Of a stretch of 39,810 nucleotides of DNA, positions 1 to 35,834 are shown piece by piece; the stretch's first letter is position 1; every line of letters starts with the position of its first letter. Source of the DNA: Octopus sinensis (Eukaryota); contig NW_021835492.1 in the NCBI RefSeq assembly GCF_006345805.1, positions 1 through 39,810 of the forward strand, given 5' to 3'. A program made the translations under genes and the position numbers. The notes beneath the pieces were generated by a model. It was not told the origin of the DNA. It made no database searches and worked only from the letters and a program-made list of their open reading frames with translations.

Positions 1-196
1 TCCATCCTCATTAAACCACTATGCACATAAAATGGACATTTCGATTTCCCCCTTTTGTCCCATTTGCTGTGCTGACGAAGACACAACTGCCCATCTATTC
101 CGCTCTATTCCGATCTTAATTTGTCATTCACTCCCTGGAGGTCCTATGGGAGCAAACTGGGAGGACGCTGTTGTTTCTGCTGGTCTCATTATCTAA
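1..196 (+). mobile_element. 3' fragment of a non-LTR retrotransposon ORF2 (C-terminal zinc knuckle), copy 1, cut by the window start
   Basis: Reads LNHYAHKMDISISPFCPICCADEDTTAHLF, resembling the LN-Y-H...CPxC...DTxxHLF C-terminus of LINE ORF2 proteins; frameshifted. Confidence 0.6.
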
Positions 197-246
197 TGCT
201 AGGTGAAATGACACAAAACAACACAAATTAAATAACAGAAAAAAAA

Positions 247-3060
247 TCATGCAGAAGCATATGCAGACAGTAATTCGTTATAAAATTCTGTCATTTTGTC
301 CAAATATATGGATAGAGTGTCCATAATATCCACTACAGGCTGGGCTTCCGTGCTGGGAAGGACTACGGGAATACTCTCTATAATTTTGATTAAATCTTTA
401 GTCGTCGTGACGACCATATTCTTCAATATGTCGAGAAAGTCAGTATTAATTGGCACAATCGAGTTGGCCACTGCCCTTATCTTGTGTCGCATATTGTCCA
501 TCTGATTACTTACACTCTTAACCACTCCTTTGCACTTTTCCACGTACTCCTCCGCAGATGGACACGACTCCTAAACATGACCCTCTCCATTCACCATCGG
601 AGACACTTCCATGAATGACTGACCACTTGACACAGCCACCACACACTCCGACGATTTGCGGGCTAACCTACACATCACCCGACCAGTCAAACATGTTCAA
701 ATCAACCACCTCGGTCAATGCGGGCAACTATGAATGTAACCACCTCGGAATACCTCGTCCATCAAATCCAATGGAAATGACTCCATTTTATTTAAGAGGG
801 CCTTACAGTCACGAATGATTGCTTACACTTTTGAAATCAATCACCTCCTTGTTGTATTTCAGCAATGCTCGCAAACGAATTGTCTGACTGACACTCATCT
901 GACTGGCCAGTTCGTTAATACTCCGAATTCTCTCATCGAACGGGAAGGGTTGGGAGTGGTACTCGGGCAATGGGGAGACCACCTCCATCCCCGGCACTTC
1001 CAACCCTCCGAACAAGTCCCTTTTCAACACCTGTTCGATCTCTCCCTTACAGATATATAATTCGACACAACCAGGTGAGATATGAGCTCATTCGTGAATT
1101 TTGTGTCATCATCCCCCATTCTTCCACGGAATTGTTCCAAGTCCATCTCCAACAGGCGAAGACCCTCCAAGTCTGATCGGACACACTCTCTCAGTCCATT
1201 CTCGAGTGGGTCAACAGGAGGGACACGTGATAACTCGTGTTTGGGAGCACATTCAATGAGATCCAACACCGTTTGTTTGGCATCATCCATAAATTGTTTT
1301 AAATGGACAATTCCCAACTGTCTCTTCTCCTCGTGGGCAATCAACTCACATTTGGTGGAGTGGAGACCCACAGCCCGCTCATGAGAACGAATAATTTTGC
1401 GAGACAACTGTCATTATTAAGCCAATAACCCACCTTGTTGACTGTACGCCTCGATTTGTAACTGGCACGTTCGTATGTATTGAACTGGGAGTCCAATTCG
1501 CCCACCCGTGCTGTCGAGGCTGCCAGTTTGTCCCCCAAAGTGTTGGAAATGGACTCCAATTGGGCCACAGTCTTCTTGGCAATGTCCAACTCGGCCTCCT
1601 TCTCCCTGAGAACACACGTCCTCGCATTGAATTGGTCATCAATCTCAAGTAGTGAGTACGTAACCAACCATTTGAATACTCTCGACAGCCAACTGATAAC
1701 ATTCCTCCAAATAGGCGACAGTCTTAGCCTGGTGGGACAGTTCGAGGGTGAATTCCCTGGGAGTTAATGACAGGAGTACTCAAAGTCGTCCTCCTTCATC
1801 AACACCCCCTTCCCCGTCGTGGCACATGTCAGTTGCTCCTTCAGTCGGTCGATCTCCCGTTCGAACATCTCCAATACACCACTCATCCAAACCTCCAGCA
1901 AACTGCCTCGTTGGAAGTCCTCGTTCACTTGTGGCTTGTTTTCGATTGTTTCTGCCAGACTGGCATACTCCAGTGTGCTCAGAGTCTCCTCGAATGACGA
2001 GGTGGATGGGGATATCGTGGCTATTATCGTCGTCCGAGTACGCCCGCCCAGCGAATCTTCAAGAATCCTCGTCAGTTTGCTCTCTCGGTAGGGAATGTGC
2101 TTGGCCTTTTCAGTCAGAGCTGTGATCACTCGTCCCAATGTCAGCAAACTCTGATTTATCTTCCCTACCGAATCACTCAACCCAAATAACCTGCTTCCCG
2201 TGCACGTTGGTTAACCGACCCCGATCTCCCCACATTCTCACTCCCCGCCAAATCCACCAAATTAAACTTGCTTGTTTTGACCACCCTTTCTCCATTATGT
2301 GAGTGGAAGGAGTGGAGGGTCACCACGAACACAGCATGTGACCGACTACACTCACATCCACGCCTACCTCGACTTTTGATTGCACTCCGTCGCCCCCACT
2401 TGACGGTTCCTGACCCCCAATTGGAGTTGTCTGTACATTTGGTCTCGTCCTTCCACTCTGACCTGCGTCACTCCCTTGATGACCACCGAATTGGCCTACT
2501 GATGGGCATTACTCACAACTTTGGAGGTTATGTCCCGAAAGAGACTCAATTTGGAGACACACTGGGAGAACAGGTCGAAAATCTCCTCGTTGTATATCTC
2601 GATGTAGGACATCTCGATGTAGCCGTCTTTGTCCTGCAGTGAGACACCAACCATGCCTTTGTGAGGTCAAACAAGTCTGAGAGGACTCGGGGGATTATTC
2701 CCGCGTCTTTGCAAAGTCCGGACTCGGAGGATTCCAGATTGCCCTCCATTGTGTGGGTCTTTCCGGAGGCAGTCTGTCCGTAGGCAAACACAGTGCAGTT
2801 GTACCCCGTGTGGACATCTTGGACCATTGGGGAGACAATGTTGTTGTAGACGTCCTCTTGGGTGGTTAGATGGTCAAATATCTCTGAGAACTGGTATGTC
2901 TTCCGTCTGTCAAAAGAGGGGTCGAGTATATATAGTTCGTTACTATTCTCGATTCTTAACATTTTTGATTTGTTTTCTTTCTTGTTTAGTGGTCTATTTT
3001 CTGTAAAAATAACTTTTACCTTATTCGTACGAAGGATTTGATACGCTCACAAGACTCCAT
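247..3060 (-). CDS. KIF11: Kinesin-5 (BimC/Eg5) mitotic motor; 15 exons, 14 introns of 22-26 nt, 822 aa
   Basis: Motifs [76 protein letters not shown]. Removing 14 introns (345 nt; e.g. 2994-3019, 2634-2656, 2496-2519, 2346-2367, 2165-2190, 1869-1892, 1757-1779) gives one open frame of 2469 nt from ATG 3060 to TGA 247. Confidence 0.92.
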
Positions 3061-3340
3061 TTAAAAATTAATTTATTTTGCGCCAGTTTTATAATTAAAC
3101 AATTTTTTGACAATATTAGTTTTTATTTTAATATTATTTGTTTTTAATCTTCAAAATTTAATTAAAAGCAATCTGATGTTAAATCTCTCCAAAACGAGTA
3201 TATGTACTGACATTTTCCTTAGTACTTTTAAAAATATAAAATACATATAATCTAAACTAGATATGATTTATGCTCAATAAATTTAATATTTATTTTAATA
3301 AATTATTATGCAATTAATCATCACTCTTACGTTGTGGTAA
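3061..3340. promoter_or_regulatory. AT-rich 280-bp divergent promoter region shared by kinesin-5 and the MADS-box gene
   Basis: Lies between head-to-head ATGs at 3060 (-) and 3341 (+); no specific motif identified. Confidence 0.4.
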
Positions 3341-3693
3341 ATGCCAAGCGGAAAATCGAAAATATCCATAAAATACATAGAAGATAAAGTCCGCCGACGC
3401 CAGTCACTGACAAAAAGAAAACAAGGACTAATGAAAAAAGTGTTTTTAATTTGTGGGGAATGTAGGCTTATGAACTGAATGTCCTCACTCGGAGTGAAGT
3501 AGCCATCGTAATAGTTTCCCCCAACCATAAGGTCTACGTGTTTGCCACAGAAATGCTGGATTCCTTCGTGAGTCCGGATAATGGGCCCAATCCATTAATG
3601 GACTATTTGCTCACAAAATATAATCTGGACTACTCCAGCATTATGCGTGAGGACACATCCAAATACTCTGAGGACGACCCGGAAATACTTTGA
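3341..3693 (+). CDS. SRF-like (type I) MADS-box transcription factor, 108 aa, one 26-nt intron (3440-3465)
   Basis: Spliced product MPSGKSKISIKYIEDKVRRRQSLTKRKQGLMKK|AYELNVLTRSEVAIVIVSPNHKVYVFATEMLDSF... matches the SRF/Mcm1 pattern KRK.G.MKKAYEL..LT...V.....S....VY.FAT; stop TGA at 3691-3693. Confidence 0.9.
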
Positions 3694-3844
3694 ATCATAT
3701 ATTAATACGTCTTTTTAATGTCGGATTTATGTGGTTTATTATCATATCTACACGCCTTTCATGTCTCCCTCCTTAGTTTATAATTGTGTGTAGATACACT
3801 GCATGAATGTGTTAATTTATAAAAATAATGAGCTAAAAATCGTT

Positions 3845-5227
3845 CTAAAAGTGACTTTCGAACAACTCAGGGCGGAGACCTCTAAGCCAGTCGGCCATTC
3901 TGTGAATAATAGCAAACAACAAACATGGCCTTTCCACACTCATTGGTCACCAAGTCAGGAAGAATGAACTGGTCATAGAAAGATGAGACTTGTCCCTGGT
4001 TATATAATTGGTAATCACACCTCAAATTCAGTCCAATCAAGTTGTGGCAGTCCATGTTCTTCCCTTCTCTGATTATAGGCAGTGTAATTGACCTACAAAC
4101 GTGGACAGGACAACCAACACTGTCCAACAACAGTCCATAACTGGGGGCAATGGGGGCGAACACCTCCAATATACAAACTACAGTACTTTCCTCAGCATGA
4201 ACAACTGCCCCAAATATGGTGGCCCAATCAGCCCTCTGCACAGGGAAATGACCACGCCTACAATAACATGACAAATCACCAATCATCTTCCTTATTTGGT
4301 GCAACAAAAAACTCTGTCCAACAATACGAACAGGCACGAATTGAATAGTCCCCGAGTCCCCCGGAAGGGACAGAGGAGGACACACCTCGACCGAGAAAAT
4401 ATGTCGGTGGTTGGTGGCCATCCTCATTTCCCTACAGTCAGCACACTCTCCTACGTCCGGGCAGTAAAGTTGTGGAAATTGTGAGTGCCTCTGAAAGCCT
4501 GCAGATACTCGTCCGCCTGCATCAGCTGGGCCTCTGAGGACTCAGGAGTGGGCTAAACCTGAAATGGCAAAGTTTCTCCACTCGAACTGGAACATTGACA
4601 CAAATGGGATACCAGGTCGGCCACTAGGGCAAAGGACGGGATATGGTATATATATGTTCTTGAACTACACAGGGTACGACTGCTGAAAGCTTTGGACACT
4701 TTTTGGGCACCTGGGAAATTTAAATTATATTTATTTTATATTTTGTCAATAATTAATAATAGATATTACAAATAACACGAATGTCAGGTGGGAGAACTGC
4801 ATTTATGTCATCAATTTTGTTTTCGACGTGTGAAGTCAGCTATTTTCACCACTAATAACAATACTTTTAACGAGACCATATTCCTCAGGGCAGACACCCC
4901 CTTGTCTGTACGGGCAGCCCTCTGGAACTTCAACTACGAGTAATTAAAGCCTCCAGACTTTGTCGAGGTTATCAATGTTGATCACATTTACTTGTAGAAG
5001 TGCGTCTATAAGCTCACCCTCTATAGTTCTGACACCCACCATCCTATCGTAGGTTTACTGAATAAGTACTTTTGCATTCCGTAATAATTGGATCCGTTGT
5101 AGCAGAGCACCAGTCCGTATTTTTTCTTATTTAATTGCCACAACTATTTTTGTTATTTTTAATATTGGACTATTCTATTGGAGGTTTTCGGCTTGGGTGA
5201 CTCATGTTGAGTGTCCACGGAGTCCAT
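3845..5227 (-). CDS. PUS1: tRNA pseudouridine synthase A family (PUS1-like), multiple micro-introns
   Basis: KKYGLVLCYNGSNYYGMQ, RTIEGEL, FQRAARTDKGVSA (catalytic Asp), GQSFLLHQIRKMIG, APSYGLLLD after removal of roughly 25-27-nt GT-AG introns; ATG 5227, TAG 3845-3847. Confidence 0.88.
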
Positions 5228-5511
5228 TTAACACGACCACACGAACGCACGAGATTGATAGTTTATTTAATAATTCGACTTTTAAGATGTTATATTTTTG
5301 AATACTTTCCTATTATTTAAATAAATTTGTTCTATTAAAATTTATAGTTAATTGAAACGTTTTAGAATAAAAATGGATCATATCAATATTATAGTGTGAG
5401 AAATCATTATAAACGTAGTTGTATTAAAAATAGCCATATCCAATTATGTTGAATTGATTCTTCGATGATGATGGAAATTAAAAGCAAAAAATATGACAAA
5501 AATAATTTTGT

Positions 5512-6154
5512 ATGGCAAAAGATGATGTATTGCAACTTAAAACAAACAATTTCAAAATTTATGTTATGGGAAGTAAAATGGTGGGGAAAACGGCTCTAAT
5601 TTCGAATTATTTGTGGAATAGAAAACTAAATGGATATGTCCCCACCATCGGCGACACATACGAGGCAAAACTGGAGAACATAACTTTTAAACTCGTTGAC
5701 ACTGCCGGGACTTTGTTGTGTCCGATGATGATGAAGATCGCAATAATGGAGGCTGATGTCATCATTCTTGTTTATAAAAACGACGACGAAATGTCTTTCA
5801 AAAAAGTGAACGACATTTTTAACCAAGTCTTATCGTTGAGAAATAGCTATCCTCCCTTCACAGTTTTTTTAGCCAATCAGTTCGAATATAACATAATAAA
5901 ATAAAAACGGAATCCCACTTTTCCACCGTCATTTATAAGTTCTCGGTGATGGACGACACATTAGTCACTATTTTTTTCAAAGAACTGTTGCTCGGGTACT
6001 TAAAACCTGCTAGTTTCATAACAAATTTTGCAATTTACGGAAGGCGTCCCAACCATCAAACAATCTGAACAGCAGATTGTATATCAATGCTCGAGGCCGT
6101 TCTAATTTTTTAAAAATATATTTTCCACAAAAAAAACATGAACGATCAGGTTGA
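5512..6154 (+). CDS. Divergent Ras-family small GTPase, paralogue A, copy 1 (two 1-nt deletions relative to copy 2; probable consensus errors or a broken allele)
   Basis: G1 GSKMVGKT, G2 PTIGDTY, G3 DTAG; intronless. Intact 214-aa version at 37502-38146; this copy lacks one A near 5896 and one near 6018. Confidence 0.85.
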
Positions 6155-6227
6155 TTCTTAATAATTACTAACATTAATTACTAACATTTCTGGAACTATT
6201 TCTCAATTTTCACTGCTATTTTTAATA

Positions 6228-10026: not shown

Positions 10027-13000
10027 TTAATAGTCGAACATATTCACAAAAATCTCATAGAACGTCTAGAATAGAAAGCAGTACTCAAACTAGATCGTCC
10101 TCCATTTGTAGAGAGTAGTGCTTACTTTTACACACTCCTCCTGTCTATAAAGTATAATTAATCCACTCTTACAGAAAATGTGATCCCCCTCTCAGTCAAA
10201 GAAGGTCTAAGAGTGATATCCCCAATATTCACATCCCAGCACACTGATACGGCGTTGGCCATATTTAATTTTAGAACGAAAACACGTCTAAGCATTACCA
10301 AATAAGCCAACTTTGACGTCAGAAAACACATTCCCATTTTGGGTCGTCGACATCTTCCAAAATGGAGCAACTCGAGATCCTCGTTCGAATATGACTAGAA
10401 TGAACCCCCAGACAAACGGAGTAAATATAGTTCATTTCGGCCTCTTCCGGAGAATAGAAGAGTATCTGTCCTTCCGGAGATATCACACGACTGAATCTCG
10501 AAATCAATGGGACATGCTCCGATTGGACGAGCATTCTGAATATTTCGAATAGGGAGGACAACAGGTCAACCATTCCTCCCAAAGGGCGCACAATTATCCC
10601 CACAACCCCCACAAGGACACCTAATGCATTGTTCGACTTCCACAGACCTTTGACTACTCCTCTACACTTTTGGAGACGACCATACTGCACTGGCTTAGTA
10701 AAGACCCCCACTGATCCCATTACAAGGCCCCTTCCCAACTCATTCATTCCGAAGTAGAAAATGGCCGTAGGTGTCTTGGCACGCCTTTTATTGAGAATGC
10801 GTCTTGTCTTATATATGGGATCAAAGGACAGGGACGAGAGAAACTTGCCTGAAGATGCAAAAAATAGTGAGAATGAGTGGGCAGCCCCCCCTAAGAGTTG
10901 AGGCAACAATCGAACCAATGACGCTGTCGAGGAAGCTGTGGACTCCACTGACGAGTCCTTGAGCGAATTCCTCCGGTCCCTTGACTGCCCCTTGGATTGG
11001 CTCGTAAAAGAGATCAGTAATGCCAGAGGAGACATTGTGGATAAATGCGTAGGGGTTGCCCAGGACATCCGCCCCCAACACGATTGCATAGAATTGCCTC
11101 ATCGTCTGGAATATGACAATAACAGACTTGATGCTTATAATGACTGAGGACAGCCCAAAACAGATTGCTGAGACTGTACACGCGCGAACGCTCCTCAAAG
11201 TAGCCCAGTCGGAGTGGAATGGACGTTACACTGATGAGTGCGGACATGAATCCTTTGATGAAGGACATGACGTAGTTCCATCCAGACGGAGATGTCTTGT
11301 CATCCACCACGGACACCGAAAGAGTACATTTGAGAGGAGAAATGTGGAGCAACTCGAAATAGAATGAGGAGGAAGTGTTGGAATATTCGCTGAGCAATGT
11401 CTGCATGTAATAGTCTGCTGTGTCCCGAGTAAGGGCCTGCTTATCCAAAGTCTCCTCCCAGCCAAATGACTCCAACACGTCCCAAAAGAAGCCCAAGTCG
11501 ACATTGGCATTGAACTCTTGCAATAACAACACGGCATATCTAGAATGACGTGGGACTGCCAACTTGACAATGGGGATATCCTCCCTTGACCTCACAACCA
11601 AACTGCCTTCTATGAACGGTCGAGGACACTTCGACACGACGGGGGACAGGATCACCGAAAACGCAGCCTTCCTCTGCTGACAGTTCAACTGGAGGTGATT
11701 TATCTTGACGTGGGACCAGTGGCCCTTCTCAGATTTGCCATGTTTTAGCCACAGTCCGTCATTGCACCGCCGGACCACTCTCCCTTCGTCGACACAATAT
11801 GTTTCGCTGTCGTTCTTACAAGTACTAATTTGGTGACTACCTTCTTCTCTATTAGCTCCAGTTGACCATTCCTCCGCTTATCTTCCAACAGTCGTCTGTC
11901 AGACTTGGGGGCCTCCCAGACGGGGGTGGAGTAGTCAAGGGAGAGGTAGAGGAGTTCGGTCTTGGATTTGTTGTCGACGTACGACACTCCTAACTCGCTG
12001 AGTGCCACTTCCATCATGAAGTATGGTCTGTTCACTTGGGCACTCTGATTATAAGTGCAATTCTCTACATTATTCAAGTACAGGGCCAGTTCTATGTTGT
12101 GGGTAAAGAGCAGTGTCCGCAGTACCCCTTCGAGGAAAGACACAAAGTAGACTTGTTGGCCATTGATCACGAATTGTTCAAATTTGTCCTAAAATAGTGA
12201 CACGAAATGTACCCCACTCATCGACACTGAGAAGGAGGGGCCACTCACGAATGAGCATTCCGCCACCAATGGTTTCCCCGGATCCGCCCACAGATAATAT
12301 AAATAAGAAAGTGAGTGCAGCCGCTGTTTTGATTGCGGGACATCCTGTTGACAGTAAATCACCGGAATCGAGCTGAGTGCGTTCACAAGACAGAATGCTG
12401 CTCTTTCCACTGTTCCGTCATACAAATAGACGGTCAGAGATGACTCGGTTTGTTGACAATCCACGTAGACCAGCAGTAGAGACGACAGTTGGACTGTGCA
12501 TGAGCGAGACCCCTCGATGAGACAAGGCTTACTAATAGTCACCAAGTCACTCTGCAGGCCGAATCGCATAAAAACAGACTTGGACCCATTGTCTGGCCAG
12601 AATGGAGCATATCCGTCTAAGAAAATGATAAAACTCAAATAAACTAATATCCACGGGAGTGGGCGGTCGGTCAGGATCAATACTGAATACAAAAATAGGA
12701 TTTGAGGTTTTGTTGCAAATGAGATAGAACGGGGACATGATTATTATTTTGGTCAATGGATACTCAGTCAGGTAGTTGCTTGCAGTTATCTGAAGTCATT
12801 GAGGAGGACTACTTACCAAATGACACAACTTTTTAGTCTTTAAAGAAAGTGTCACAAAACTGGAGGGTATTGTCAAATTGTACAACCTCGACCATTTACT
12901 CCCCTCACATTTAATCCTCATCTAAAATGACCAATTGGGCAGTACTTTGGCCTTGTTTACTACTTTGGGGCACAACAAGAGATATTCGTCCTCCCTACAA

Positions 13001-16000
13001 GTATGTTCTACCAAAGAGTGTTCAGTCTGCAATGACAATACTCGAATAACCTTCCTACACATGCAACCACACAGTCCGGGGTCGTTCATTTGATATGTCA
13101 ACACAAGCCCGGTCTTGTTGATCACCCAGTACGGACAGAATATATTCCACACTCTCCCTCCTTTACGAAACACAGTCTGAATTCCCAAAACCTTGGAGTA
13201 CTCAGAATACAGGAAACCATGGACATAGAAGAATATACAAATTCGCAATATTCCTCTCCTTCCTCCCCGCCCTCGAACAATGTCCTCGAACATCTCCACT
13301 CAGACGATTGGTAATCCAGCAACTGCAATAAAAACAAGGAGAAATCACCAGATCTATTCTATCGCCATAACAGACTCCCCGCAGGTCAAGGCATTCCATC
13401 GACTCAATCTTGTCTTGATTCCAACCCTATCAATCAAATGCCCAAATCTGCCTTCAGTCTGATTGAATAAGGGAGACAGTTCTGGATTACAAGAATTGGG
13501 TGAATGTGCACTACTTGCACAAAAGCAGTCGCCCCTTCACATTTCACTTGAATATATTCAGTAACCACCTTCAGTCTAACACAGAGGACAACCTGGAGGT
13601 GAATGCTTTCCGTGGGTATACTAATGACCATTCCTTGAGGAGAAAGCAAATCCTCTAATGAGACTTGTTCGCAGTCTTCCACTTTTCCATCCTTGGAGCA
13701 AAACGTGATATATTGAGCACTGAGTGCGGGAATTGGGAGGTGGCAATTAGAATGTGCAGCAATGAAATATCTCTCGTCCATCAAACAAGTTAAATCCAAG
13801 TTTAGATGATTACGCAACTTGTCATTAATTGGATTACTAAACTTGAATTGTCGACCTGAACGTGACACTTATTTGACTGTATGACAGTTCAACTGCAGAG
13901 ATGAGGACCACGCTCGAGGACCCACCAAAGAACTGATAGGCTGTCTGGACTGCAGATCTCACCTCCAATTTTCTCTTCTGCTTGAATCCTTCCATCTACA
14001 ACTCCACACACCGTCTGTCACCGAAATTGAGAAATTGTAATCATTCTGACGATGCTCACTACTCAACAAGTCGAGGACCCGGTGATCTGACTCGACGTGG
14101 GACTTGTGCCACATTTTGAGTAACTGGCCGTGACCCAGGGATTCCGTGTCCCCACCACCACTGGTCATCATTCGTGGGTCGACGGATATGACAAGCCCAA
14201 GCCCAGACTGATTGTTGAATACCAGGGGAGCCTTTTCCACCGAATCATCCGAATAAACAAGATTATAGGCGTCAGTAAATTCCTAATCATAGCCCACCAA
14301 ATCATACTTTTGACAAATTGGTGAGCAGTTTACAAGAATATCCAGTCAGTGTGATCTCCAGTCGGTCTCGAGAGGAAAATTTTAACGACAATTCGCCGTC
14401 TACAGTTCGTGCATTCCTAGTACCGGAATTTGTATAAGACAGGGCAAATGTCCACGGTTTGTGCTGACCACGTTCGATGATTGGCTCAATCAATGGCTCC
14501 CATAGTGAATTATTGTTGTTATAACAAACAGCCATTATAGTGCCAGTACTCTCCAAACTAGACTGGCACTAAGAGAGGGGAATACATTATTCTGACGAGT
14601 TGTCATTTGGGCATTGAATGTCCCGTCCATCGTCACCAAAGGGGGAGCATTCGGGAGATACTGAGACGACATGTGCACCAAAATCGTGTCAATATCTACT
14701 TTCATCTTGGTTGTCATATTGCACACTGTCTTGTCCGTGATCTCTGTCTTTTCTAAATTTGTTCAACAAGTGGCAATAACTTGTAGGGATGGTTAGAAAT
14801 GGAAAAGAATCCACATTTAAAGAACGCGGACCCCAAGAATCCACGGAAACTGACTCTTTCGTTTGGTCCTTTACGGCCGACTGTTGAGTAGAAACACCGG
14901 ACAGAGTGGCAGATAGACTGTTGACTACTACAGGAGACAGTCCAATTGTTATTGTGGGAATATGGACAGTTGATTCAATCAGTTGGTCATCATATACCCG
15001 ATTATACAAAACTTTGATTGGCTTGACGACCTATCATATGAAAAGGAGGAAAACTGTTATGTTTGTTTCGAAATGACCCCTCTCGCAATATTTACCAGCA
15101 AATAATTCCGTTTGATTAAAAATGAGATCAAATTCGGCAGAGTGCTGATTCCAATTCCCCTCGTAAGACAAAACACTCTGCCAAATTAACCACACAGGAA
15201 ATACTCTGAGAAGGAACCCTTCTGTGATTTTGCCCGATTCGAGCAATATCACATCCACCGAGGAATCCACACTCACTGTCATCTCTCCCCCCATTTTGAC
15301 AGGCGTCTCGGGATCATCATCCGTTTTCTCCGGCTTGCTGATTATGGACAAAATAGTCAGCACATACGGGAGGTCGAGAGCCAGTATAAAGGGAACTATT
15401 TTCGCCTTGACTGCCAATATAATCGACTATCACAAACTCGAAGTATGGACAGACTCCACCATATGAGAATATTCTACAAAATTGGCAAGGGAGTGGCCCC
15501 CTTTCCTGTACAGGACAGTCCGATTAGATTTCGTCGGCCGGGCGTCCTTGATGCTCAAATCAAGAATGGTTATTCGATAGTGACTCCATTCCCCGAACTC
15601 TACCCTCACCACAAGATGGTCGATATCAGCATGTCCATAACATGAGTCTCGGGAATGACTAATAAAGTCGTCTATTTTCCCCTTGAATGGTATTACTTAA
15701 TATTTCACTTGTTTGAAATATATTTCCAGTTCGATAACCCCAACCTCTATTTCCCACTCCATAGACATCTTCGACTCCGAGGAGATGGGCACTTTCGCAG
15801 AACTCTTATCGCCATACTGTGCCTCACTCGAAGGAATAGATGTATTTGCGAATGCCTCCAGGAATAGGACGTAATCAGACCGACTGGCCTCAATCTGAAA
15901 TCGAGTAATTCTGCCCATACACTCAGCTTTGGGACAGTCCCGTGTATTCTAACAAGCCCACGGCCATCTTGTGGACGGGCAACTGTGAAAACTGCGGAAA

Positions 16001-19000
16001 TGGGGAGAACCAGGTCACAAAGAAGGGAATAAATATCTAAATATCCATCAAATAGTTGAATTCTGTAAAATAACCGCAATAAATGTGCACCTCTGCAAAT
16101 TGAGGGAGTCGATGGACACTCGAATGTATTCCATCGGCGTGTCAGTGATGGCAAACTCGTTAGTAATACTCAAATCACCAAAGTCGGCTAAAATGCAGTC
16201 ATTTGAGTCAGCACATCTCGGAAATCTCACTTCCGGGGCATTTACATTTATCTACTCGATTCTAATTTGAAAACATACATTTAATTTAATTCTGCTTTGT
16301 CTTTTTAGCATTTTTGCAGATTTGTGAACAGCCAGGTTAATCTTCTCCCCTATTTTTGCTGAGGGAGACATCGGGCCGTCTGTCAGTATTTTCAGATGGT
16401 CCAGAAATGTCCAAAAAGGAGTCAACACTTTTGTCAAATAGACAATTCGGATCTTCCTCAGGAACAACTCGATTTCCATGTATTTCTCCTGATTCCAGAC
16501 ACGGATACTGCCATGGGCCACTCGCATGTTTTTCTCCGCAGTCACAAAATGACGGTATGGACAGTTTTCCAACAGTGAATCCACTGCCACACTTCCAAGT
16601 TCGAATTTTATTGTATTAAGGTCATCAGTAAATTCCGTCACTGTCGAAAGATCCTTCACTTTGATTTCCACTCGTTCGTTTTTTGTGGTTGTCATTTCCA
16701 ACAAGATTGAGTCTATTTGTGCTGTAAAAACAGTCTCCTTGAATTCCACCGAGGACAAATTAGTCGGAATGACTTGGCCGTGACTGTACGACGAGAATGT
16801 CTTAATCGAGCCTTCCTTGGGAACACGAAGAGAGGAAACGAAAGTGAGAATCCCCACAAACACGTCTTCATAGACAAACAAACTGAACTTAGTGAATCGT
16901 ATATTTATATTCAGTCTCACCCCTCCATATATCTCCACAAACCCAGGATTGTCTCTGTTAGCCTACATGTCCTCATACTACGTGGCAAACCAATGTCATG
17001 TCCACAGTCAGCAGACAACCCTGTCGAGCTGTGTCGGGAGAAGACAATATTTGCAAACGCCCATCACTTTCGAGTAGTTTGTCCAGAGAGAGAGAAATTA
17101 TTGAGAATGTCAAGTTAGTGGCACGTGTGTTTACACTCATGGCACATTTCATAGAATTAATTGTCAATAGCAAGTCGTGTGCATTGATTGTCAATTTCAG
17201 ACAAACCTCCATGCTTATACAGGCAGGGATACCTTTTGGATTACAAAACATAAATTAATGATGAATAAATCGACGTTTTCGGATACTTCTGGCTCGGACT
17301 GCCGAGTTTCCAGCATTTTGGCCAGTCTATATTCATTCTCTGCTTGATTGATGGAGCATATCTCTTCTTCTATCTCCCGGTCTGGTGACTCCAACGTTGG
17401 TAGCGTCTCAGAAAAGGCCAGCAACTTTGTCATTTTGTCTTGGCTCAATATCAATTGAATCGAAGGCAGTTCTCCATCCACCAGAAATCTACAAATGTAA
17501 ATCAAGCATACTTTGGATATTGAGGATCCACCAGGATGCACTTTTTGATGTGGAGATTTATGGAAACTGGGAGTAGCAGATGGAAGGGGGAGTGGTCCTG
17601 CTTGATTACATGTCGCCAGTCGTCATCTTAAATGGATTAATAGATCCACCCTTTTCACACAGAAGAATCTGAATTCGGTTGAGGCTGACCAAGTAGTGGT
17701 CGTATATTAGTTCTTCTACTTTTGGGTGTCCAATCCAGTACTCGGGATGGACAGGAGGGTTAGTTTTCCCAAGTCGGCCACAATGAGTGAAGAGTGTCTA
17801 AGCGAGGTCACTCAGTCAGGCCACCTGAAATAGTCCCCAGAGTCAGGAATGAGTAGTTTAATGGCTTCAAAATCAAGAGAAATGTCTGCAAAGTGTTTGC
17901 TCTGGAGTATGTTCCTGATCCCCGTCGACGACTTGTCCCGCAGTTCTCTAATCCTTTCCAATGTCTCCATTTGATATCTGCACGTGGGAATACGAACACA
18001 ACCCTTTGAACACCAGCGAGTCGGGCGGAGTCAGAAAGCAAATGAGATCTCTGGCAATGTCCTAAGAACTGACCACAGCCGCCTACCTTTGTATAGGTTA
18101 TCAAAACTGGCTGAGTCTTCACTCGGACAAACACAGAACACTCTGTTTTGACAGGGTTCAGTTCAAAGTCGCCGTCAATGAACGCCTTCTTGTCGACAGT
18201 AACCATGTTTTCCATAAATGTATAATATTTCCCATCCTCTTGGGCATGGACTATTTTAAGACTGTGGAGGGACAGTTTCATTCTGAGTAAAGACAGGAGA
18301 ACACCTTATTCCGTTCGAGGAGGGTCGGTAGAATATTGTTGAGCTGAATTTGAATGACTGCAGTCTGATTGGTCTGGTTGTCCTGAATATGTCAGTTTGA
18401 CTACACAAACCGATCATTAACTCGAAAAGAAAAGGACCTCACGACGAGGCTCAGCGAGTAGGCAACATACTATGACATTTGGATGTGTATTATACATCGA
18501 GGGGGTAATTGGACGAGTCCGGCATGTCGTCGCTATATCCGATTGCTTCGTGGAATTTAATGCGTTCTTGTTCCGTGAATTCTAACTCAAAATCCTTTTC
18601 TACAATTCTCAGATCAAATGGACTTAGTGTGCTCCCACTGCTCCACAGATATGCCCCGATTCGACCAAACCATCCCTTCTTGTTGGCCGACTCAGAGTTC
18701 TCTCAAATACCCATGATTATCAACTCACCTTATTTCTGGCAATCTTACGGGCTAGTACTAGGCAGAATAAGTCAAGCTGCGTCTCCCCAGACTAGTGGAT
18801 GGTAACTTGCCTAATACAGAAAGGTGCGTTCTGGTCTCTGCGGAGATATTCCTGTCCCCCTTTGTCAGCAAGCAGTCGTATGCCTCGATGTACTTTTTGA
18901 ACACGCGATAATATTCGAGAGTTGCCGCAATATTTCGATATTTGCTTCTGATTTGTGTCTCCATTATGCACGTGAAGGCATATTTCCACCTGAGTAATTC

Positions 19001-20301
19001 GGAATAAATACATCAGGCGCAGATTTGTCTTCAAACTTCCTGCAGGGCGGAATTTTCGATATCTGAGAGCGATGGACCGTAGATTGAGGGAATCCTGCAA
19101 TTCTAGAATGCTCGCGTACTGCAAAACCGTCAAGACAACTCAAACCTGCAATCTGTCCAGCGTCAGTTCGAGGTTGCCGAGCTTTACTTGTCCTCTCACT
19201 TTGGACTGAGTGTAACCCACTTCTCTCGGCTTCATGTTTATTTCCAATTTGGCATCCAAGGACAGTGGAAGTAGCACTTGTCCAATAATGCTCCCATTTG
19301 AATGACCTCCGATCGTCCTGCTCAAATACTCCTAAGATTTAATTATTCTCAAACTTTTATTTCATGAGCGGATTTGTCCGCAACGAGACTCTGGCAGTCA
19401 GCATCACAGTAGACGGTCAGCGATCGAAGTTCAGCTAGCTACAATATTTTGACAATTAACATAAATAAATCAGTGTACCTAAATACTTATTAATTAATTA
19501 TTTAATTTGTAGCTAGTTAATTAATAAATAAACTATTGCATAAATCTGTCATGTGGTCACCTTGTTAAAAATGAAACGAGTCTCAGTGATGATAGTTTGC
19601 TTCCAATCCTCACCCACAGTCTACGAATGGTCAGTCCAAATGCCTTACTCTGACGACAATATCGTTCAATGTGACCCCCAATGACAATGGTTTAGTCACA
19701 TTGCTCGAATCCTCATACCGAATATGCACATTCCTGACCGTCAGCTGAATATTCTTGATGACCTGAAGTAGAATCATCTCCACATATCCCGTGGAACCAT
19801 GACTCTCTACCCTCAACACTCACACCTCACTTGTGGGTTGACTGTTGCGCTCGATTCTCTCCAAGTCTGCCATTTTCTTAGCCTGGGTGAGCCTGTCTTC
19901 CTCCTCCTGGTTGTACGACTGGCCTGGGAGTGAGGAAAGTGCCCACCATCGCTGGGCCGACAACACACGAGCACGTCCGTAATCTCCCCTACGACGGGGG
20001 CCTTGTAGATATTCGTCCAGGGAACTTGCAGGCGAAATGTGCCTGCTGAGTGAGTCCCATTACCAATGTGGCCGTAGATTATGCGGACTGGAATGTTGTT
20101 GTCTTCCTGCGTGATTAGACAGGTGGGGTACAAAGATGGTCGTCCTCAGGGTCAGGTCTTTGAGGAGGATGTCGCCTATTGTGGGTGGTTTGTTGTTCTA
20201 CCTTTCCAAATGTTCGTCTTGAGCTGGTCCTTGTCGAGGTTACAAATGTAGTCCCCCAGAGCTCGATTTAGGATGTCGGCAACCAGACTCTCGAATACCA
20301 T
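10027..20301 (-). CDS. VPS13: VPS13A/C-like bridge-type lipid transfer protein; dozens of micro-introns; 3' end approximate
   Basis: Chorein N-terminus [28 protein letters not shown] at ATG 20301, [28 protein letters not shown]; C-terminal [23 protein letters not shown]2_C-like [16 protein letters not shown] and a PH-like tail. First introns are 26, 25, 21 and 23 nt. Confidence 0.92.
19439..19560 (-). other. Exceptionally long (122-nt) AT-rich intron in VPS13
   Basis: GT at 19560 and AG at 19439 join ...RFIFNK to [12 protein letters not shown], matching the VPS13 HKL..L.SL.VY.D motif. Confidence 0.75.
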
Positions 20302-32186: not shown

Positions 32187-32236
32187 TGCTAGGTGAAATG
32201 ACACAAAACAACACAAATTAAATAACAGAAAAAAAA

Positions 32237-35050
32237 TCATGCAGAAGGATATGCAGACAGTAATTCGTTATAAAATTCTGTCATTTTGTCCAAATATATG
32301 GATAGAGTGTCCATAATATCCACTACAGGCTGGGCTTCCGTGCTGGGAAGGACTACGGGAATACTCTCTATAATTTTGATTAAATCTTTAGTCGTCGTGA
32401 CGACCATATTCTTCAATATGTCGAGAAAGTCAGTATTAATTGGCACAATCGAGTTGGCCACTGCCCTTATCTTGTGTCGCATATTGTCCATCTGATTACT
32501 TACACTCTTAACCACTCCTTTGCACTTTTCCACGTACTCCTCCGCAGATGGACACGACTCCTAAACATGACCCTCTCCATTCACCATCGGAGACACTTCC
32601 ATGAATGACTGACCACTTGACACAGCCACCACACACTCCGACGATTTGCGGGCTAACCTACACATCACCCGACCAGTCAAACATGTTCAAATCAACCACC
32701 TCGGTCAATGCGGGCAACTATGAATGTAACCACCTCGGAATACCTCGTCCATCAAATCCAATGGAAATGACTCCATTTTATTTAGGAGGGCCTTACAGTC
32801 ACGAATGATTGCTTACACTTTTGAAATCAATCACCTCCTTGTTGTATTTCAGCAATGCTCGCAAACGAATTGTCTGACTGACACTCATCTGACTGGCCAG
32901 TTCGTTAATACTCCGAATTCTCTCATCGAACGGGAAGGGTTGGGAGTGGTACTCGGGCAATGGGGAGACCACCTCCATCCCCGGCACTTCCAACCCTCCG
33001 AACAAGTCCCTTTTCAACACCTGTTCGATCTCTCCCTTACAGATATATAATTCGACACAACCAGGTGAGATATGAGCTCATTCGTGAATTTTGTGTCATC
33101 ATCCCCCATTCTTCCACGGAATTGTTCCAAGTCCATCTCCAACAGGCGAAGACCCTCCAAGTCTGATCGGACACACTCTCTCAGTCCATTCTCGAGTGGG
33201 TCAACAGGAGGGACACGTGATAACTCGTGTTTGGGAGCACATTCAATGAGATCCAACACCGTTTGTTTGGCATCATCCATAAATTGTTTTAAATGAACAA
33301 TTCCCAACTGTCTCTTCTCCTCGTGGGCAATAAACTCACATTTGGTGGAGTGGAGACCCACAGCCCGCTCATGAGAACGAATAATTTTGCGAGACAACTG
33401 TCATTATTAGGCCAATAACCCACCTTGTTGACTGTACGCCTCGATTTGTAACTGGCACGTTCGTATGTATTGAACTGGGAGTCCAATTCGCCCACCCGTG
33501 CTGTCGAGGCTGCCAGTTTGTCCCCCAAAGTGTTGGAAATGGACTCCAATTGGGCCACAGTCTTCTTGGCAATGTCCAACTCGGCCTCCTTCTCCCTGAG
33601 AACACACGTCCTCGCATTGAATTGGTCATCAATCTCAAGTAGTGAGTACGTAACCAACCATTTGAATACTCTCGACAGCCAACTGATAACATTCCTCCAA
33701 ATAGGCGACAGTCTTAGCCTGGTGGGACAGTTCGAGGGTGAATTCCCTGGGAGTTAATGACAGGAGTACTCAAAGTCGTCCTCCTTCATCAACACCCCCT
33801 TCCCCGTCGTGGCACATGTCAGTTGCTCCTTCAGTCGGTCGATCTCCCGTTCGAACATCTCCAATACACCACTCATCCAAACCTCCAGCAAACTGCCTCG
33901 TTGGAAGTCCTCGTTCACTTGTGGCTTGTTTTCGATTGTTTCTGCCAGACTGGCATACTCCAGTGTGCTCAGAGTCTCCTCGAATGACGAGGTGGATGGG
34001 GATATCGTGGCTATTATCGTCGTCCGAGTACGCCCGCCCAACGAATCTTCAAGAATCCTCGTCAGTTTGCTCTCTCGGTAGGGAATGTGCTTGGCCTTTT
34101 CAGTCAGAGCTGTGATCACTCGTCCCAATGTCAGCAAACTCTGATTTATCTTCCCTACCGAATCACTCAACCCAAATAACCTGCTTCCCGTGCACGTTGG
34201 TTAACCGACCCCGATCTCCCCACATTCTCACTCCCCGCCAAATCCACCAAATTAAACTTGCTTGTTTTGACCACCCTTTCTCCATTATGTGAGTGGAAGG
34301 AGTGGAGGGTCACCACGAACACAGCATGTGACCGACTACACTCACATCCACGCCTACCTCGACTTTTGATTGCACTCCGTCGCCCCCACTTGACGGTTCC
34401 TGACCCCCAATTGGAGTTGTCTGTACATTTGGTCTCGTCCTTCCACTCTGACCTGCGTCACTCCCTTGATGACCACCGAATTGGCCTACTGATGGGCATT
34501 ACTCACAACTTTGGAGGTTATGTCCCGAAAGAGACTCAATTTGGAGACACACTGGGAGAACAGGTCGAAAATCTCCTCGTTGTATATCTCGATGTAGGAC
34601 ATCTCGATGTAGCCGTCTTTGTCCTGCAGTGAGACACCAACCATGCCTTTGTGAGGTCAAACAAGTCTGAGAGGACTCGGGGGATTATTCCCGCGTCTTT
34701 GCAAAGTCCGGACTCGGAGGATTCCAGATTGCCCTCCATTGTGTGGGTCTTTCCGGAGGCAGTCTGTCCGTAGGCAAACACAGTGCAGTTGTACCCCGTG
34801 TGGACATCTTGGACCATTGGGGAGACAATGTTGTTGTAGACGTCCTCTTGGGTGGTTAGATGGTCAAATATCTCTGAGAACTGGTATGTCTTCCGTCTGT
34901 CAAAAGAGGGGTCGAGTATATATAGTTCGTTACTATTCTCGATTCTTAACATTTTTGATTTGTTTTCTTTCTTGTTTAGTGGTCTATTTTCTGTAAAAAT
35001 AACTTTTACCTTATTCGTACGAAGGATTTGATACGCTCACAAGACTCCAT
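32237..35050 (-). CDS. KIF11: Kinesin-5, second copy
   Basis: Same exon structure at offset 31990; six SNPs (three synonymous, one intronic, L>F, A>P under the splice model). Confidence 0.92.
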
Positions 35051-35683: not shown

Positions 35684-35834
35684 ATCATATATTAATACGT
35701 CTTTTTAATGTCGGATTTATGTGGTTTATTATCATATCTACACGCCTTTCATGTCTCCCTCCTTAGTTTATAATTGTGTGTAGATACACTGCATGAATGT
35801 GTTAATTTATAAAAATAATGAGCTAAAAATCGTT

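What the first reader, a model, noticed from the sequence alone, without database searches (positions are those of the whole stretch)
247..3060. Length-ruled micro-intron system with no polypyrimidine tract and any base at acceptor -3
Seen: all 14 kinesin introns are 22-26 nt, and introns modelled in the other genes are mostly 21-28 nt. Many are purine- or G-rich (GTAGGCGTGGATGTGAGTGTAG, GTGAATGGAGAGGGTCATGTTTAG), and acceptors include TAG, CAG, AAG and even GAG (1869-1892 ends TTGGAG). SNPs between the repeat copies fall at synonymous or intronic positions under this model. Inference: the 3' splice site is chosen mainly by distance from the 5' site, implying a remodelled spliceosome (U2AF/branch-point recognition).
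Basis: partly seen in the sequence, partly recalled or inferred. Interest (0 to 1): 0.7.

Follow-up and report, generated by a model that had tools for sequence, protein, structure and literature searches.

The report
Dicyemid-type micro-introns in a parasite contig
The 22-26-base segments that interrupt this kinesin gene are real introns, but they are the already described ultra-short introns of dicyemid mesozoans, on a contig that is filed under Octopus sinensis and most likely comes from its kidney parasite.

Summary
The window is the whole contig VCDQ01007082.1 of the 'Octopus sinensis' assembly. It is gene-dense and carries a kinesin-5 gene (minus strand, 3060-247) split by 14 introns of 22-26 nt. 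It also carries a VPS13-like gene with about 48 introns, almost all 19-33 nt.

The introns are real. Nine of the 14 kinesin introns, and 26 of the 48 VPS13 introns, sit where other animals' orthologues have introns. Chance would give 1.6 and 5.1.

- One kinesin intron is GC-AG.
- Only 2 of 14 are purine-rich.
- 2 of the 5 exonic differences between the repeat copies change an amino acid.
- Position -3 is still a pyrimidine in 76%, although GAG acceptors are real (5 of 34).

Weak canonical signals remain: AG|GTA, an A at +16 to +18 in 32 of 34, T at -6/-5/-3, and exon +1 G. The rule 'first AG ending at least 21-22 nt from the 5' end' predicts 33 of 34 acceptors.

The best reading is a compressed but conventional U2-type intron in a dicyemid, the renal parasite of this octopus. 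Such introns have been described since 2007 (26.2 +/- 1.9 nt, weak signals). This is already known. A remodelled spliceosome is untested.

The parts
247..3060 (-). Kinesin-5 (KIF11/Klp61F-like) coding region, 822 aa, 15 exons, TGA stop at 249-247
   Evidence: Model. The Pfam kinesin motor profile is matched 1-327 of 327 in one stretch at 345 bits. Best hits are animal KIF11 proteins at up to about 49% identity.
2994..3019 (-). Kinesin intron 1, 26 nt, GTAAAAGTTATTTTTACAGAAAATAG, phase 2
   Evidence: Same alignment column (27) as an intron of Lingula and Clytia KIF11. It restores VRIR|PLN. The internal AG ending at +19 is skipped.
2634..2656 (-). Kinesin intron 2, 23 nt, GC-AG (GCATGGTTGGTGTCTCACTGCAG); the alternative is a 14-nt GT-AG at 2634-2647
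   Evidence: These are the only frame-restoring options that keep the conserved flanking blocks. It has an A at +17. It lies 3 columns from a Lingula intron in a gappy part of the alignment. It is identical in both copies.
2496..2519 (-). Kinesin intron 3, 24 nt, GTTGTGAGTAATGCCCATCAGTAG, phase 0, ends in an in-frame TAG
   Evidence: Position shared with Lingula and Clytia. The internal CAG ending at +21 is skipped.
2346..2367 (-). Kinesin intron 4, 22 nt, GTAGGCGTGGATGTGAGTGTAG, phase 2, inside the SSRSH motif
   Evidence: Position shared with Lingula and Clytia. Removing it gives a gapless SSRSH alignment.
2165..2190 (-). Kinesin intron 5, 26 nt, GTTATTTGGGTTGAGTGATTCGGTAG, phase 1
   Evidence: Position shared with Lingula and Clytia. 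It restores REAG|KINQSL.
1869..1892 (-). Kinesin intron 6, 24 nt, GTTTGGATGAGTGGTGTATTGGAG, GAG acceptor, length a multiple of 3 with no in-frame stop
   Evidence: Position shared with Lingula and Clytia. Removing it gives a gapless neck alignment to 7 homologues. NCBI's model retains it.
1757..1779 (-). Kinesin intron 7, 23 nt, GTACTCCTGTCATTAACTCCCAG
   Evidence: Position shared with Lingula and Clytia. It contains a TTAAC motif with A at +16/+17.
1644..1668 (-). Kinesin intron 8, 25 nt, GTTGGTTACGTACTCACTACTTGAG, GAG acceptor
   Evidence: Position shared with Lingula (column 442). It has an A at +16. The rival 22-nt option at 1700-1679 has no A at +16 to +18.
1408..1433 (-). Kinesin intron 9, 26 nt, GTGGGTTATTGGCTTAATAATGACAG; carries the one intronic difference between the copies (1420)
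   Evidence: Position shared with Lingula (column 512). The difference is listed.
1046..1071 (-). Kinesin intron 10, 26 nt, GTTGTGTCGAATTATATATCTGTAAG
   Evidence: Frame and parsimony model only.
802..826 (-). Kinesin intron 11, 25 nt, GTAAGCAATCATTCGTGACTGTAAG
   Evidence: Within 2 columns of a Lingula intron, but in a poorly aligned part of the tail.
728..753 (-). Kinesin intron 12, 26 nt, GTATTCCGAGGTGGTTACATTCATAG
   Evidence: Frame model. Only one other frame-compatible option exists (44 nt).
668..692 (-). Kinesin intron 13, 25 nt, GTTTGACTGGTCGGGTGATGTGTAG
   Evidence: Frame model. It scores best among 7 alternatives.
571..594 (-). Kinesin intron 14, 24 nt, GTGAATGGAGAGGGTCATGTTTAG, ends in an in-frame TAG
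   Evidence: Frame and parsimony model.
32237..35050 (-). Second copy of the kinesin gene (offset +31990), open under the same model
   Evidence: It differs from copy 1 at 6 sites; 13 of the 14 introns are identical.
10160..20301 (-). VPS13A/C-like gene, about 2948 aa, 48 modelled introns (47 of 19-33 nt, one of 122 nt)
   Evidence: Model. Homologues score E = 1e-190 to 1e-145. 26 of 48 introns fall within 2 columns of handfish VPS13A introns, against 5.1 by chance and at most 14 in 2000 trials. The position-conserved short introns are: 20201-20176, 20131-20107, 20063-20043, 19946-19924, 19842-19819, 19648-19621, 19354-19332, 19145-19119, 19011-18990, 18817-18792, 18724-18702, 18495-18470, 18086-18062, 17649-17627, 17511-17489, 17232-17207, 16990-16963, 16090-16063, 14307-14283, 14021-13996, 12945-12922, 12816-12790, 12644-12617, 12212-12189, 10985-10958.
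19439..19560 (-). The one long intron (122 nt, AT-rich) in the VPS13-like gene
   Evidence: Curated by hand. Its position is shared with handfish VPS13A.

Best explanation
The window is a contig of a dicyemid mesozoan (Dicyema or a close relative), the parasite that lives in the renal sacs of Octopus sinensis. It was assembled and annotated as octopus DNA. Its genes carry the ultra-short spliceosomal introns typical of dicyemids.

These are ordinary U2-type GT-AG introns, with a rare GC-AG, sitting at ancestral animal intron positions and shrunk to near the physical minimum of 21-28 nt.

Shown here:
- The segments are introns.
- Their length is narrowly bounded.
- Weak canonical signals survive: (A)G|GTA at the donor, an A at +16 to +18 that stays anchored to the 5' end as length varies, T at -6, -5 and -3, and AG|G at the acceptor.
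- The acceptor is almost always the first AG ending at least 21-22 nt from the donor.

Inferred:
- The +16 to +18 A is the branch point. It sits at about the shortest distance that lets the 5' splice-site helix and the U2/branch-site helix form on one RNA.
- AGs within about 3-4 nt of it are sterically unusable.
- The next AG downstream is taken with little help from a pyrimidine tract, which is why GAG and AAG acceptors are tolerated.
- The 'length rule' is then a consequence of a fixed minimal 5'ss-to-branch spacing plus next-AG choice. It is not a separate measuring device.
For: SOURCE
- The kinesin protein is on record only on a 39810-bp contig, VCDQ01007082.1 of GCA_006345805.1, under the name Octopus sinensis.
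- D. japonicum was collected from O. sinensis renal sacs (PMC6736024).
- At least 10 genes lie in 32 kb.
- The standard genetic code fits, with TGA and TAA stops.

THE INTRONS ARE REAL AND ANCESTRAL
- 9 of 14 kinesin intron positions are shared with Lingula and/or Clytia, P < 2e-4.
- 26 of 48 VPS13 intron positions are shared with a fish gene, against 5.1 expected.
- The alignments are gapless across the junctions and the kinesin Pfam match is full length.

LENGTH
- 34 conserved introns span 21-28 nt, mean 25.0 +/- 1.9.
- Published dicyemid values are 26.2 +/- 1.9 (PMC2222250), 24.93 +/- 2.51 (PMC2483917) and a median of 27 (PMC6543705).

SIGNALS
- An A at +16 to +18 in 32 of 34 (p = 2.6e-6).
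- The peak sits at +16/+17 in introns of 24 nt or less and at +16 to +18 in introns of 26 nt or more. Measured from the 3' end it moves from -7/-8 to -9 to -11.
- Y at -3 is 76-81%. Y at -5/-6 is 76% against 43% in decoys. A at +3 is 55% against 10%. Leave-one-out AUC against decoys is 0.91.
- The first-AG rule predicts 33 of 34, and skipped AGs all end at or before +21.
- The same shift of weak A residues with intron length is reported for D. japonicum (PMC13644364).
Against: - No dicyemid reference sequence could be compared. No close relative of the kinesin tail or of VPS13 exists in the protein collection. The taxon therefore rests on host association plus the intron hallmark.
- No transcript evidence was available, so exact boundaries are inferred. 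Conserved position fixes them only to about +/-2 residues.
- The VPS13 introns were found with an 18-34-nt search window, so the upper tail of the length distribution is biased.
- The depletion of AG between +22 and the acceptor is only marginal (0 observed, 3.4 expected, P about 0.03) and is partly favoured by how the model was built.
- The branch point is assigned from base frequencies, not from lariats.
- Exonic TAG and TAA are depleted by coding, so decoy contrasts at -3 and +3 are inflated.
- One in-frame TAG in the prenyltransferase gene cannot be removed by any 21-28-nt intron.
Confidence: 0.8

Rival explanations
1. Acceptor choice is made by a true molecular ruler from the 5' splice site, by a spliceosome whose U2AF and branch-point recognition has been remodelled or lost, so that intron sequence hardly matters.
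For: - Signals beyond GT/AG are weak. A weight matrix picks the right intron in only 7 of 14 cases.
- GAG and AAG acceptors make up 8 of 34.
- There is no pyrimidine tract.
- Length is very uniform.
- Irimia and Roy found 'no signature of branch points' and the weakest known 5' boundary score in dicyemids (PMC2483917).
- Human short introns with truncated tracts use SPF45 instead of U2AF (PMC8363638).
Against: - A 5'-anchored A at +16 to +18 is present in 32 of 34.
- Pyrimidine is still preferred at -3, -5 and -6.
- AG|GTA and AG|G contexts are enriched.
- In the convergent myxozoan case, U2 snRNA and U2AF1/2 are conserved (PMC13644364).
- In Stentor, the snRNAs and most spliceosomal proteins are conserved (PMC9505925).
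- No spliceosome component was examined here.
Confidence: 0.2
2. The contig comes from another animal with introns under 30 nt, such as a myxobolid-like myxozoan, rather than a dicyemid.
For: Myxobolids have median introns of 22-27 nt with similarly reduced signals (PMC13644364). Nothing in the window places it in Spiralia rather than Cnidaria. Identity to all animal homologues is about equal, 29-31%.
Against: - Dicyemids live in the renal sacs of O. sinensis.
- Myxobolids are parasites of fish and annelids.
- The length statistics match published dicyemid values closely.
- GC is 31-47% here, against 29% for the H. salminicola genome.
Confidence: 0.06
3. The contig comes from a ciliate or other protist of the cephalopod kidney or gut (for example Chromidina or Aggregata). 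Ciliates also have tiny introns.
For: Paramecium introns of 20-35 nt have a similar size (PMC2222250). The kinesin gene ends in TGA.
Against: - 35 intron positions are shared with animal orthologues.
- The best hits for the kinesin (apart from one fungus) and for VPS13 are animals.
- VPS13 ends in TAA, and no in-frame TAA or TAG is needed in about 3770 codons.
Confidence: 0.02
4. The segments are not introns. They would be assembly indels or frameshifts, or a decayed pseudogene, and the GT..AG pairs are found by chance.
For: GT..AG pairs of 21-28 nt are common: 267-286 lie inside the modelled exons. Every junction has alternative solutions. The assembly is said to be PacBio-based; this is from memory and was not checked here.
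Against: - The coincidence with orthologous intron positions is far above chance.
- Both copies keep all 14 introns and an open frame.
- The motor-domain match is full length only after removal.
- The phase distribution of 36:13:13 is typical of old introns.
Confidence: 0.02

Closest known systems
Ultra-short spliceosomal introns of dicyemid mesozoans (Aruga 2007, PMC2222250; Irimia and Roy 2008, PMC2483917; Ogino 2010, Gene 449:70; Lu 2019, PMC6736024; Zverkov 2019, PMC6543705; Hadjez 2026, PMC13644364)
   Same: - GT-AG introns of uniform length. Here 25.0 +/- 1.9 nt; published 26.2 +/- 1.9, 24.9 +/- 2.5 and a median of 27.
- They sit at conserved animal intron positions.
- The donor is reduced to GTa and the acceptor to little more than AG.
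- There is no, or only a minimal, pyrimidine tract.
- Weak A residues lie further from the AG in longer introns.
- The host is Octopus sinensis.
   Different: Nothing essential differs. Small additions from this window:
- GAG acceptors at conserved positions.
- One GC-AG candidate.
- An explicit 'first AG at or beyond +21/22' rule.
- The fact that the contig is filed and annotated as octopus.
The species was not determined.
Ultra-short introns of myxobolid myxozoans (Hadjez 2026, PMC13644364)
   Same: Median 22-27 nt, reduced splice-site logos, weak A residues upstream of the AG, and a parasitic animal with a reduced genome.
   Different: A different phylum and different hosts; the similarity is convergent. 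That paper reports conserved U2 snRNA and U2AF1/2 for myxozoans.
Tiny introns of ciliates (Paramecium 20-35 nt; Stentor 15-16 nt; PMC9505925) and of the Bigelowiella natans nucleomorph
   Same: Narrow length classes near a physical minimum, donors reduced to GT(A), and no strong branch-point consensus (PMC2483917).
   Different: Those are unrelated lineages, and the ciliates use variant genetic codes. Here the code is standard and intron positions are shared with animals.
Human short introns with truncated pyrimidine tracts, spliced with SPF45/RBM17 instead of U2AF (Fukumura 2021, PMC8363638)
   Same: The pyrimidine tract is too short for U2AF65. This gives a precedent for 3' splice-site recognition without the U2AF heterodimer.
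   Different: The human introns are about 50-60 nt or longer. Whether dicyemids use an SPF45-like route is unknown. This is a lead, not a test.

Membership tests
Dicyemid-type ultra-short U2 spliceosomal introns | GT-AG (rarely GC-AG) boundaries | tested here: met
   60 of 62 modelled introns are GT-AG and 2 are GC-AG candidates.
Dicyemid-type ultra-short U2 spliceosomal introns | Narrow length distribution centred on about 25-27 nt | tested here: met
   34 position-conserved introns span 21-28 nt, mean 25.0 +/- 1.9. The VPS13 search window was 18-34 nt, so the upper tail is biased. One 122-nt intron was also found.
Dicyemid-type ultra-short U2 spliceosomal introns | Positions conserved with orthologous introns of other animals ('conservative exon/intron structure') | tested here: met
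   Kinesin 9 of 14 against 1.6 by chance. VPS13 26 of 48 against 5.1 by chance.
Dicyemid-type ultra-short U2 spliceosomal introns | Removed from the mature mRNA (cDNA or RNA-seq junctions) | not testable with these tools
   No transcript-derived protein of this or a close species is in the collection. Support is indirect: homology and a full-length Pfam match.
Dicyemid-type ultra-short U2 spliceosomal introns | The source organism is a dicyemid | tested here: inconclusive
   The contig is labelled O. sinensis, which is the host of D. japonicum. It shows animal intron positions and the micro-intron hallmark. No dicyemid sequence was available for direct comparison.
Dicyemid-type ultra-short U2 spliceosomal introns | Reduced splice-site logos (GTa ... 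AG) and a missing or very short pyrimidine tract | tested here: met
   A at +3 is 53-55%. Positions +4 to +6 are near background. Pyrimidine runs average about 3 nt. Y is enriched only at -6, -5 and -3.
Ciliate tiny introns | Ciliate nuclear code or gene content, with no sharing of animal intron positions | tested here: not met
   TAA and TGA both act as stops. 35 positions are shared with animal genes. Best hits are animals.
Myxobolid myxozoan ultra-short introns | Median 22-27 nt with reduced signals, in a cnidarian parasite of fish and annelids | tested here: inconclusive
   The intron features fit equally well. Host and composition argue against it. No phylogenetic placement was attempted because the branches are long.
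U12-type (minor) introns | An extended /RTATCCTT donor and a TCCTTAAC branch site | tested here: not met
   No intron in the lists carries these motifs (read by eye).
U2AF-independent (SPF45-type) short-intron splicing | Splicing persists without U2AF and needs SPF45/RBM17 | not testable with these tools
   Only the cis feature, a truncated pyrimidine tract, is seen. No trans factors lie in the window.

The most novel reading that the evidence does not exclude
In dicyemids the 3' splice site is chosen without U2AF-type reading of a pyrimidine tract or of the -3 base. A branch A is fixed at the minimal distance (+16 to +18) from the donor, and the spliceosome takes the first AG beyond a steric exclusion zone. 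That would explain why 15% of conserved introns end in GAG. If so, this animal would be a natural model for U2AF-independent, geometry-driven acceptor choice.
Probability: 0.25. Interest if true: 0.55.

Novelty: already known. Interest (0 to 1): 0.25.

Why it matters
The biology is established. Dicyemid genes have uniform introns of about 25 nt with very weak signals, reported since 2007 and revisited in 2026.

What this window adds is practical:
- A RefSeq-annotated 'Octopus sinensis' contig is most likely parasite DNA.
- Its annotated proteins are mis-spliced. One example is the 271-aa 'Klp61F', which should be an 822-aa kinesin-5. Standard gene finders do not allow introns under 30 nt.
- Anyone using cephalopod gene sets for comparative work can be misled by such contigs.

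The small set of 34 position-validated introns also gives a concrete, testable rule: a branch-like A at +16 to +18, then the first AG at or beyond +21/22, with GAG tolerated. This sharpens the open question of how ultra-short introns are told apart from the many same-length GT..AG decoys in exons.

Tried and rejected
- Fewest-intron search for an open frame without homology. It yields wrong solutions, such as 10 introns of 26-59 nt or 13 introns with out-of-frame motor segments. Every junction has several frame-compatible GT..AG pairs. Frame alone therefore cannot prove the model.
- Codon-usage Viterbi with a flat 10-150-nt length prior. It miscalled introns even in the training gene. An unbiased ab initio length distribution could not be obtained. 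I used positional conservation instead.
- The 19-20-nt introns called by the 18-34-nt model. None is position-conserved. One such call, in the prenyltransferase gene, was wrong on inspection; the correct intron there is 23 nt.
- Rfam and tRNA scans of the window found nothing, so there is no snRNA to examine.
- Search for transcripts or relatives. The kinesin tail hits only the window's own annotated protein. No close VPS13 relative exists.
- Gene structures of Saccoglossus, Cyclopterus and Apostichopus VPS13 could not be fetched. The handfish gene worked.
- tblastn exon mapping missed many short exons. I replaced it with exact k-mer diagonal chaining.
- A test for depletion of introns whose length is a multiple of 3. 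17 of 61 are such introns, but detection is biased against those without a stop, so the test is inconclusive.
- A literature search for reports of dicyemid contamination in the O. sinensis assembly found none.
- Supplementary logos of Hadjez 2026 are not held as text.
Full report
WHAT IS AT THE COORDINATES

The minus strand of 247-3060 encodes a kinesin-5 (KIF11/Klp61F) protein. With 14 short segments removed, one open frame of 822 codons runs from the ATG at 3060 to a TGA at 249-247. The segments are 26, 23, 24, 22, 26, 24, 23, 25, 26, 26, 25, 26, 25 and 24 nt long.

Thirteen are GT-AG. The second (2656-2634) is GC-AG. Its only frame-restoring alternative that keeps the conserved flanks is a 14-nt GT-AG (2647-2634).

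The spliced protein matches the Pfam kinesin motor profile from position 1 to 327 in a single stretch at 345 bits. It aligns across the motor-domain junctions to seven animal KIF11 proteins without gaps.

ARE THEY REALLY INTRONS?

Frame and GT..AG alone do not prove it. A fewest-intron search gives other solutions, and every junction has several frame-compatible GT..AG pairs.

The decisive evidence is position. I fetched the KIF11 genes of the brachiopod Lingula (L002) and the hydrozoan Clytia (L003), mapped their exons exactly, and projected intron positions onto the protein alignment. Nine of the 14 modelled introns fall within two columns of an intron in one or both species. Random placement gives 1.6 on average and never more than 7 in 5000 trials. 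The nine include the two GAG-ending introns at 1892-1869 and 1668-1644.

I then modelled the large VPS13A/C-like gene on the minus strand (20301-10160). Its N-terminus was curated by hand and the rest came from a frame and codon model that allowed 18-34-nt introns. I compared it with the 75 introns of a fish VPS13A gene (L004). Of 48 modelled introns, 26 coincide, against 5.1 expected and at most 14 in 2000 permutations.

These segments are therefore old animal introns, shrunk in place. Sequencing error, pseudogene decay and a protist origin are excluded for practical purposes. VPS13 ends in TAA and the kinesin in TGA, and no in-frame stop has to be read through.

WHERE THE WINDOW COMES FROM

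The kinesin tail has no relative in the 5.8-billion-protein collection except one 271-aa protein named 'kinesin-like protein Klp61F [Octopus sinensis]'. That protein is encoded on a contig of exactly 39810 bp, VCDQ01007082.1 of GCA_006345805.1. The window is that whole contig.

NCBI's model skips a conserved part of the motor, reads through several micro-introns out of frame, and retains the 24-nt GAG intron. Its kinesin domain match is split in two.

The contig does not look like octopus DNA:
- At least ten genes lie in 32 kb: pseudouridine synthase, two Ras-like GTPases, VPS13, inositol monophosphatase, a kinase, prenyltransferase beta and transposon remnants.
- Coding regions are about 45% GC and spacers about 31%.
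- The introns are of a size known in only two animal groups.

Dicyemids live in the renal sacs of this very host. D. japonicum was collected from O. sinensis (PMC6736024). I conclude that the contig is most likely dicyemid DNA carried into the octopus assembly. This is an inference. No dicyemid sequence was available for direct comparison, and I found no paper reporting such contamination.

COMPARISON WITH WHAT IS KNOWN

- Aruga et al. 2007 found 16 introns of 26.2 +/- 1.9 nt at conserved positions in Dicyema genes, from cDNA and genomic sequence.
- Irimia and Roy 2008 listed 41 Dicyema introns of 24.93 +/- 2.51 nt. They reported the weakest known 5' boundary score and 'no signature of branch points'.
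- Zverkov et al. 2019 reported a median of 27 bp. They cite Ogino et al. [quoted passage not shown]
- Lu et al. 2019 gave a mean of 38 bp for D. japonicum.
- Hadjez et al. 2026 showed that only dicyemids and myxobolid myxozoans among animals have such introns. The donor is reduced to GTa and the acceptor to AG. The pyrimidine tract is missing or extremely short. Two or three weak A residues lie further from the AG the longer the intron.

My 34 position-conserved introns span 21-28 nt, mean 25.0 +/- 1.9, median 25.

- Composition. The kinesin introns are T 36%, G 28%, A 23%, C 13%. Only 2 of 14 exceed 60% purine. The conserved set is T 34%, A 25%, G 21%, C 20%. 'G/T-rich and C-poor' is a fairer description than 'purine-rich'.
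- Acceptors. The kinesin has TAG 7, CAG 3, AAG 2, GAG 2. The conserved set has T 17, C 9, G 5, A 3 at -3. All four bases occur and GAG is real, but pyrimidine is still preferred: 25 of the first 31, p = 2e-4 against exon composition.
- SNPs. The two copies of the gene (1-6227 equals 31991-38219 at 99.86%) differ at only six sites in the gene: one intronic, three synonymous and two non-synonymous (L500F, A820P). The claim is only partly right, and the sample is too small to support the model.

HOW IT MOST LIKELY WORKS

Aligned from the 5' end, the conserved introns show an A peak at +16, +17 and +18 (0.39-0.42, against 0.13-0.19 at +13 to +15 and 0.06 at +19). At least one A lies there in 32 of 34 introns. 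Composition predicts 58% (p = 2.6e-6), and same-length exonic GT..AG decoys show 66% (p = 6e-4 for the first 31).

The peak stays at +16/+17 in introns of 24 nt or less and at +16 to +18 in introns of 26 nt or more. Counted from the 3' end it moves from -7/-8 to -9 to -11. It is therefore anchored to the donor, as Hadjez et al. describe for D. japonicum.

Other biases are exon -1 G (50% against 17% in decoys), +3 A, T at +19, -6, -5 and -3, and exon +1 G. Together these amount to about 6 bits, which is biased upward by the small sample and by the coding depletion of TAG and TAA in decoys. They give a leave-one-out AUC of 0.91 against 267 decoys.

The signals are weak. A matrix trained on VPS13 introns picks the modelled kinesin intron among frame-compatible alternatives in only 7 of 14 cases.

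For the acceptor, the 29 internal AGs counted in the first 31 conserved introns end at +4 to +21, and used AGs end at +21 to +28. 'First AG ending at or beyond +21 (or +22)' predicts 33 of 34. The absence of AG between +22 and the acceptor is only marginally significant (0 against 3.4 expected) and is partly favoured by the modelling.

My reading is a conventional U2-type intron compressed to its geometric minimum. The shown parts are the data above. The inferred parts follow from established spliceosome architecture:
- The 5' splice-site helix needs about 6 nt.
- The U2/branch-site helix needs about 6-7 nt upstream of the branch A.
- Together these place the earliest possible branch near +16.
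- AGs within a few nucleotides of the branch cannot reach the active site.
- The next AG is then taken with almost no pyrimidine-tract help.

The length rule follows from this. Whether U2AF still takes part is unknown. A precedent for U2AF-independent splicing of short introns with truncated tracts exists in human cells (SPF45, PMC8363638). In myxozoans and Stentor, however, the core machinery is conserved.

LIMITS

- There are no transcripts, no lariats and no dicyemid reference.
- Boundaries are fixed by position only to about two residues.
- The VPS13 set was found with an 18-34-nt window.
- Five kinesin introns rest on parsimony alone.
- An in-frame TAG in the prenyltransferase gene is not explained by any 21-28-nt intron.
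- How the cell avoids the several hundred exonic GT..AG decoys remains open.

VERDICT

The phenomenon is already known. The useful new point is that the contig and its RefSeq proteins are probably mis-assigned parasite sequence.

Noticed in passing
whole window (1-39810): The window is the complete contig VCDQ01007082.1 of the 'Octopus sinensis' assembly GCA_006345805.1. It is most likely DNA of a dicyemid parasite. The RefSeq protein 'kinesin-like protein Klp61F [Octopus sinensis]' (271 aa, P0121) is a mis-spliced model of an 822-aa kinesin-5.
   Followed up: partly
1-9463 and 31991-39810: The contig ends in a 7.8-kb direct repeat of its start. 1-6227 equals 31991-38219 at 99.86%, and 7870-9463 equals 38219-39810 at 99.75%. 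The cause could be a tandem duplication of a 32-kb unit, two alleles joined end to end, or an over-run circular or tandem template. It was not resolved.
   Followed up: partly
6228-7869: A 1642-bp insertion is present only in copy 1. It has imperfect terminal inverted repeats of about 23 nt (CAGTAAACCTCTGTGCTCGCCA... / ...TGGCGAGCACCAGAGGTTTTACTG). The target looks like TA, though the right-hand copy reads CA. A pogo/Tc1-like DDE remnant lies at 6939-7088. It appears to be a transposon insertion polymorphism between the two copies.
   Followed up: partly
19439-19560 (minus): This is the one long intron (122 nt, AT-rich) among about 60 micro-introns. It sits at a position shared with vertebrate VPS13A. 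Not all introns in this genome are compressed.
   Followed up: no
30701-30703 (minus), prenyltransferase-beta gene 30400-31300: An in-frame TAG lies between ...VQLW and ASLIIPAGLSQYLVCCGQ.... No 21-28-nt GT-AG intron can remove it in frame; the only options are 12, 15 or 33 nt. It could be an assembly error, an odd intron or a damaged gene. Two clean 23-nt introns lie nearby (GTGAGTGGAGTGGTGACATTCAG and GTTAGTCATTCTGGGGACTGTAG).
   Followed up: partly
5506-5901 and 8337-9023 (plus), repeated at 37498-37797 and 38731-39030: Two paralogous Ras-family small GTPase genes, about 79% identical in DNA, lie 2.9 kb apart. They appear to lack introns.
   Followed up: no
21270-21888 (minus), 24095-24478 (plus), 28215-30088 (minus): Mobile-element remnants lie in the AT-rich spacers: a pogo-type DDE_1 fragment, a retroelement integrase-core fragment, and two long overlapping ORFs (247 and 397 aa) with no Pfam match.
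   Followed up: partly
1892-1869 and 20063-20043 (minus): Two position-conserved introns have a length that is a multiple of 3 and contain no in-frame stop (24 and 21 nt). If retained, they would add 8 or 7 residues in frame and escape nonsense-mediated decay. Frame-based gene models cannot detect such introns, so more may be hidden in the 'exons'.
   Followed up: partly
kinesin-5 protein, C-terminal third (window about 247-1400, minus): The protein is short for a kinesin-5 (822 aa against about 1000-1100). Its tail does not align with the conserved C-terminal region present in the seven animal homologues compared.
   Followed up: no
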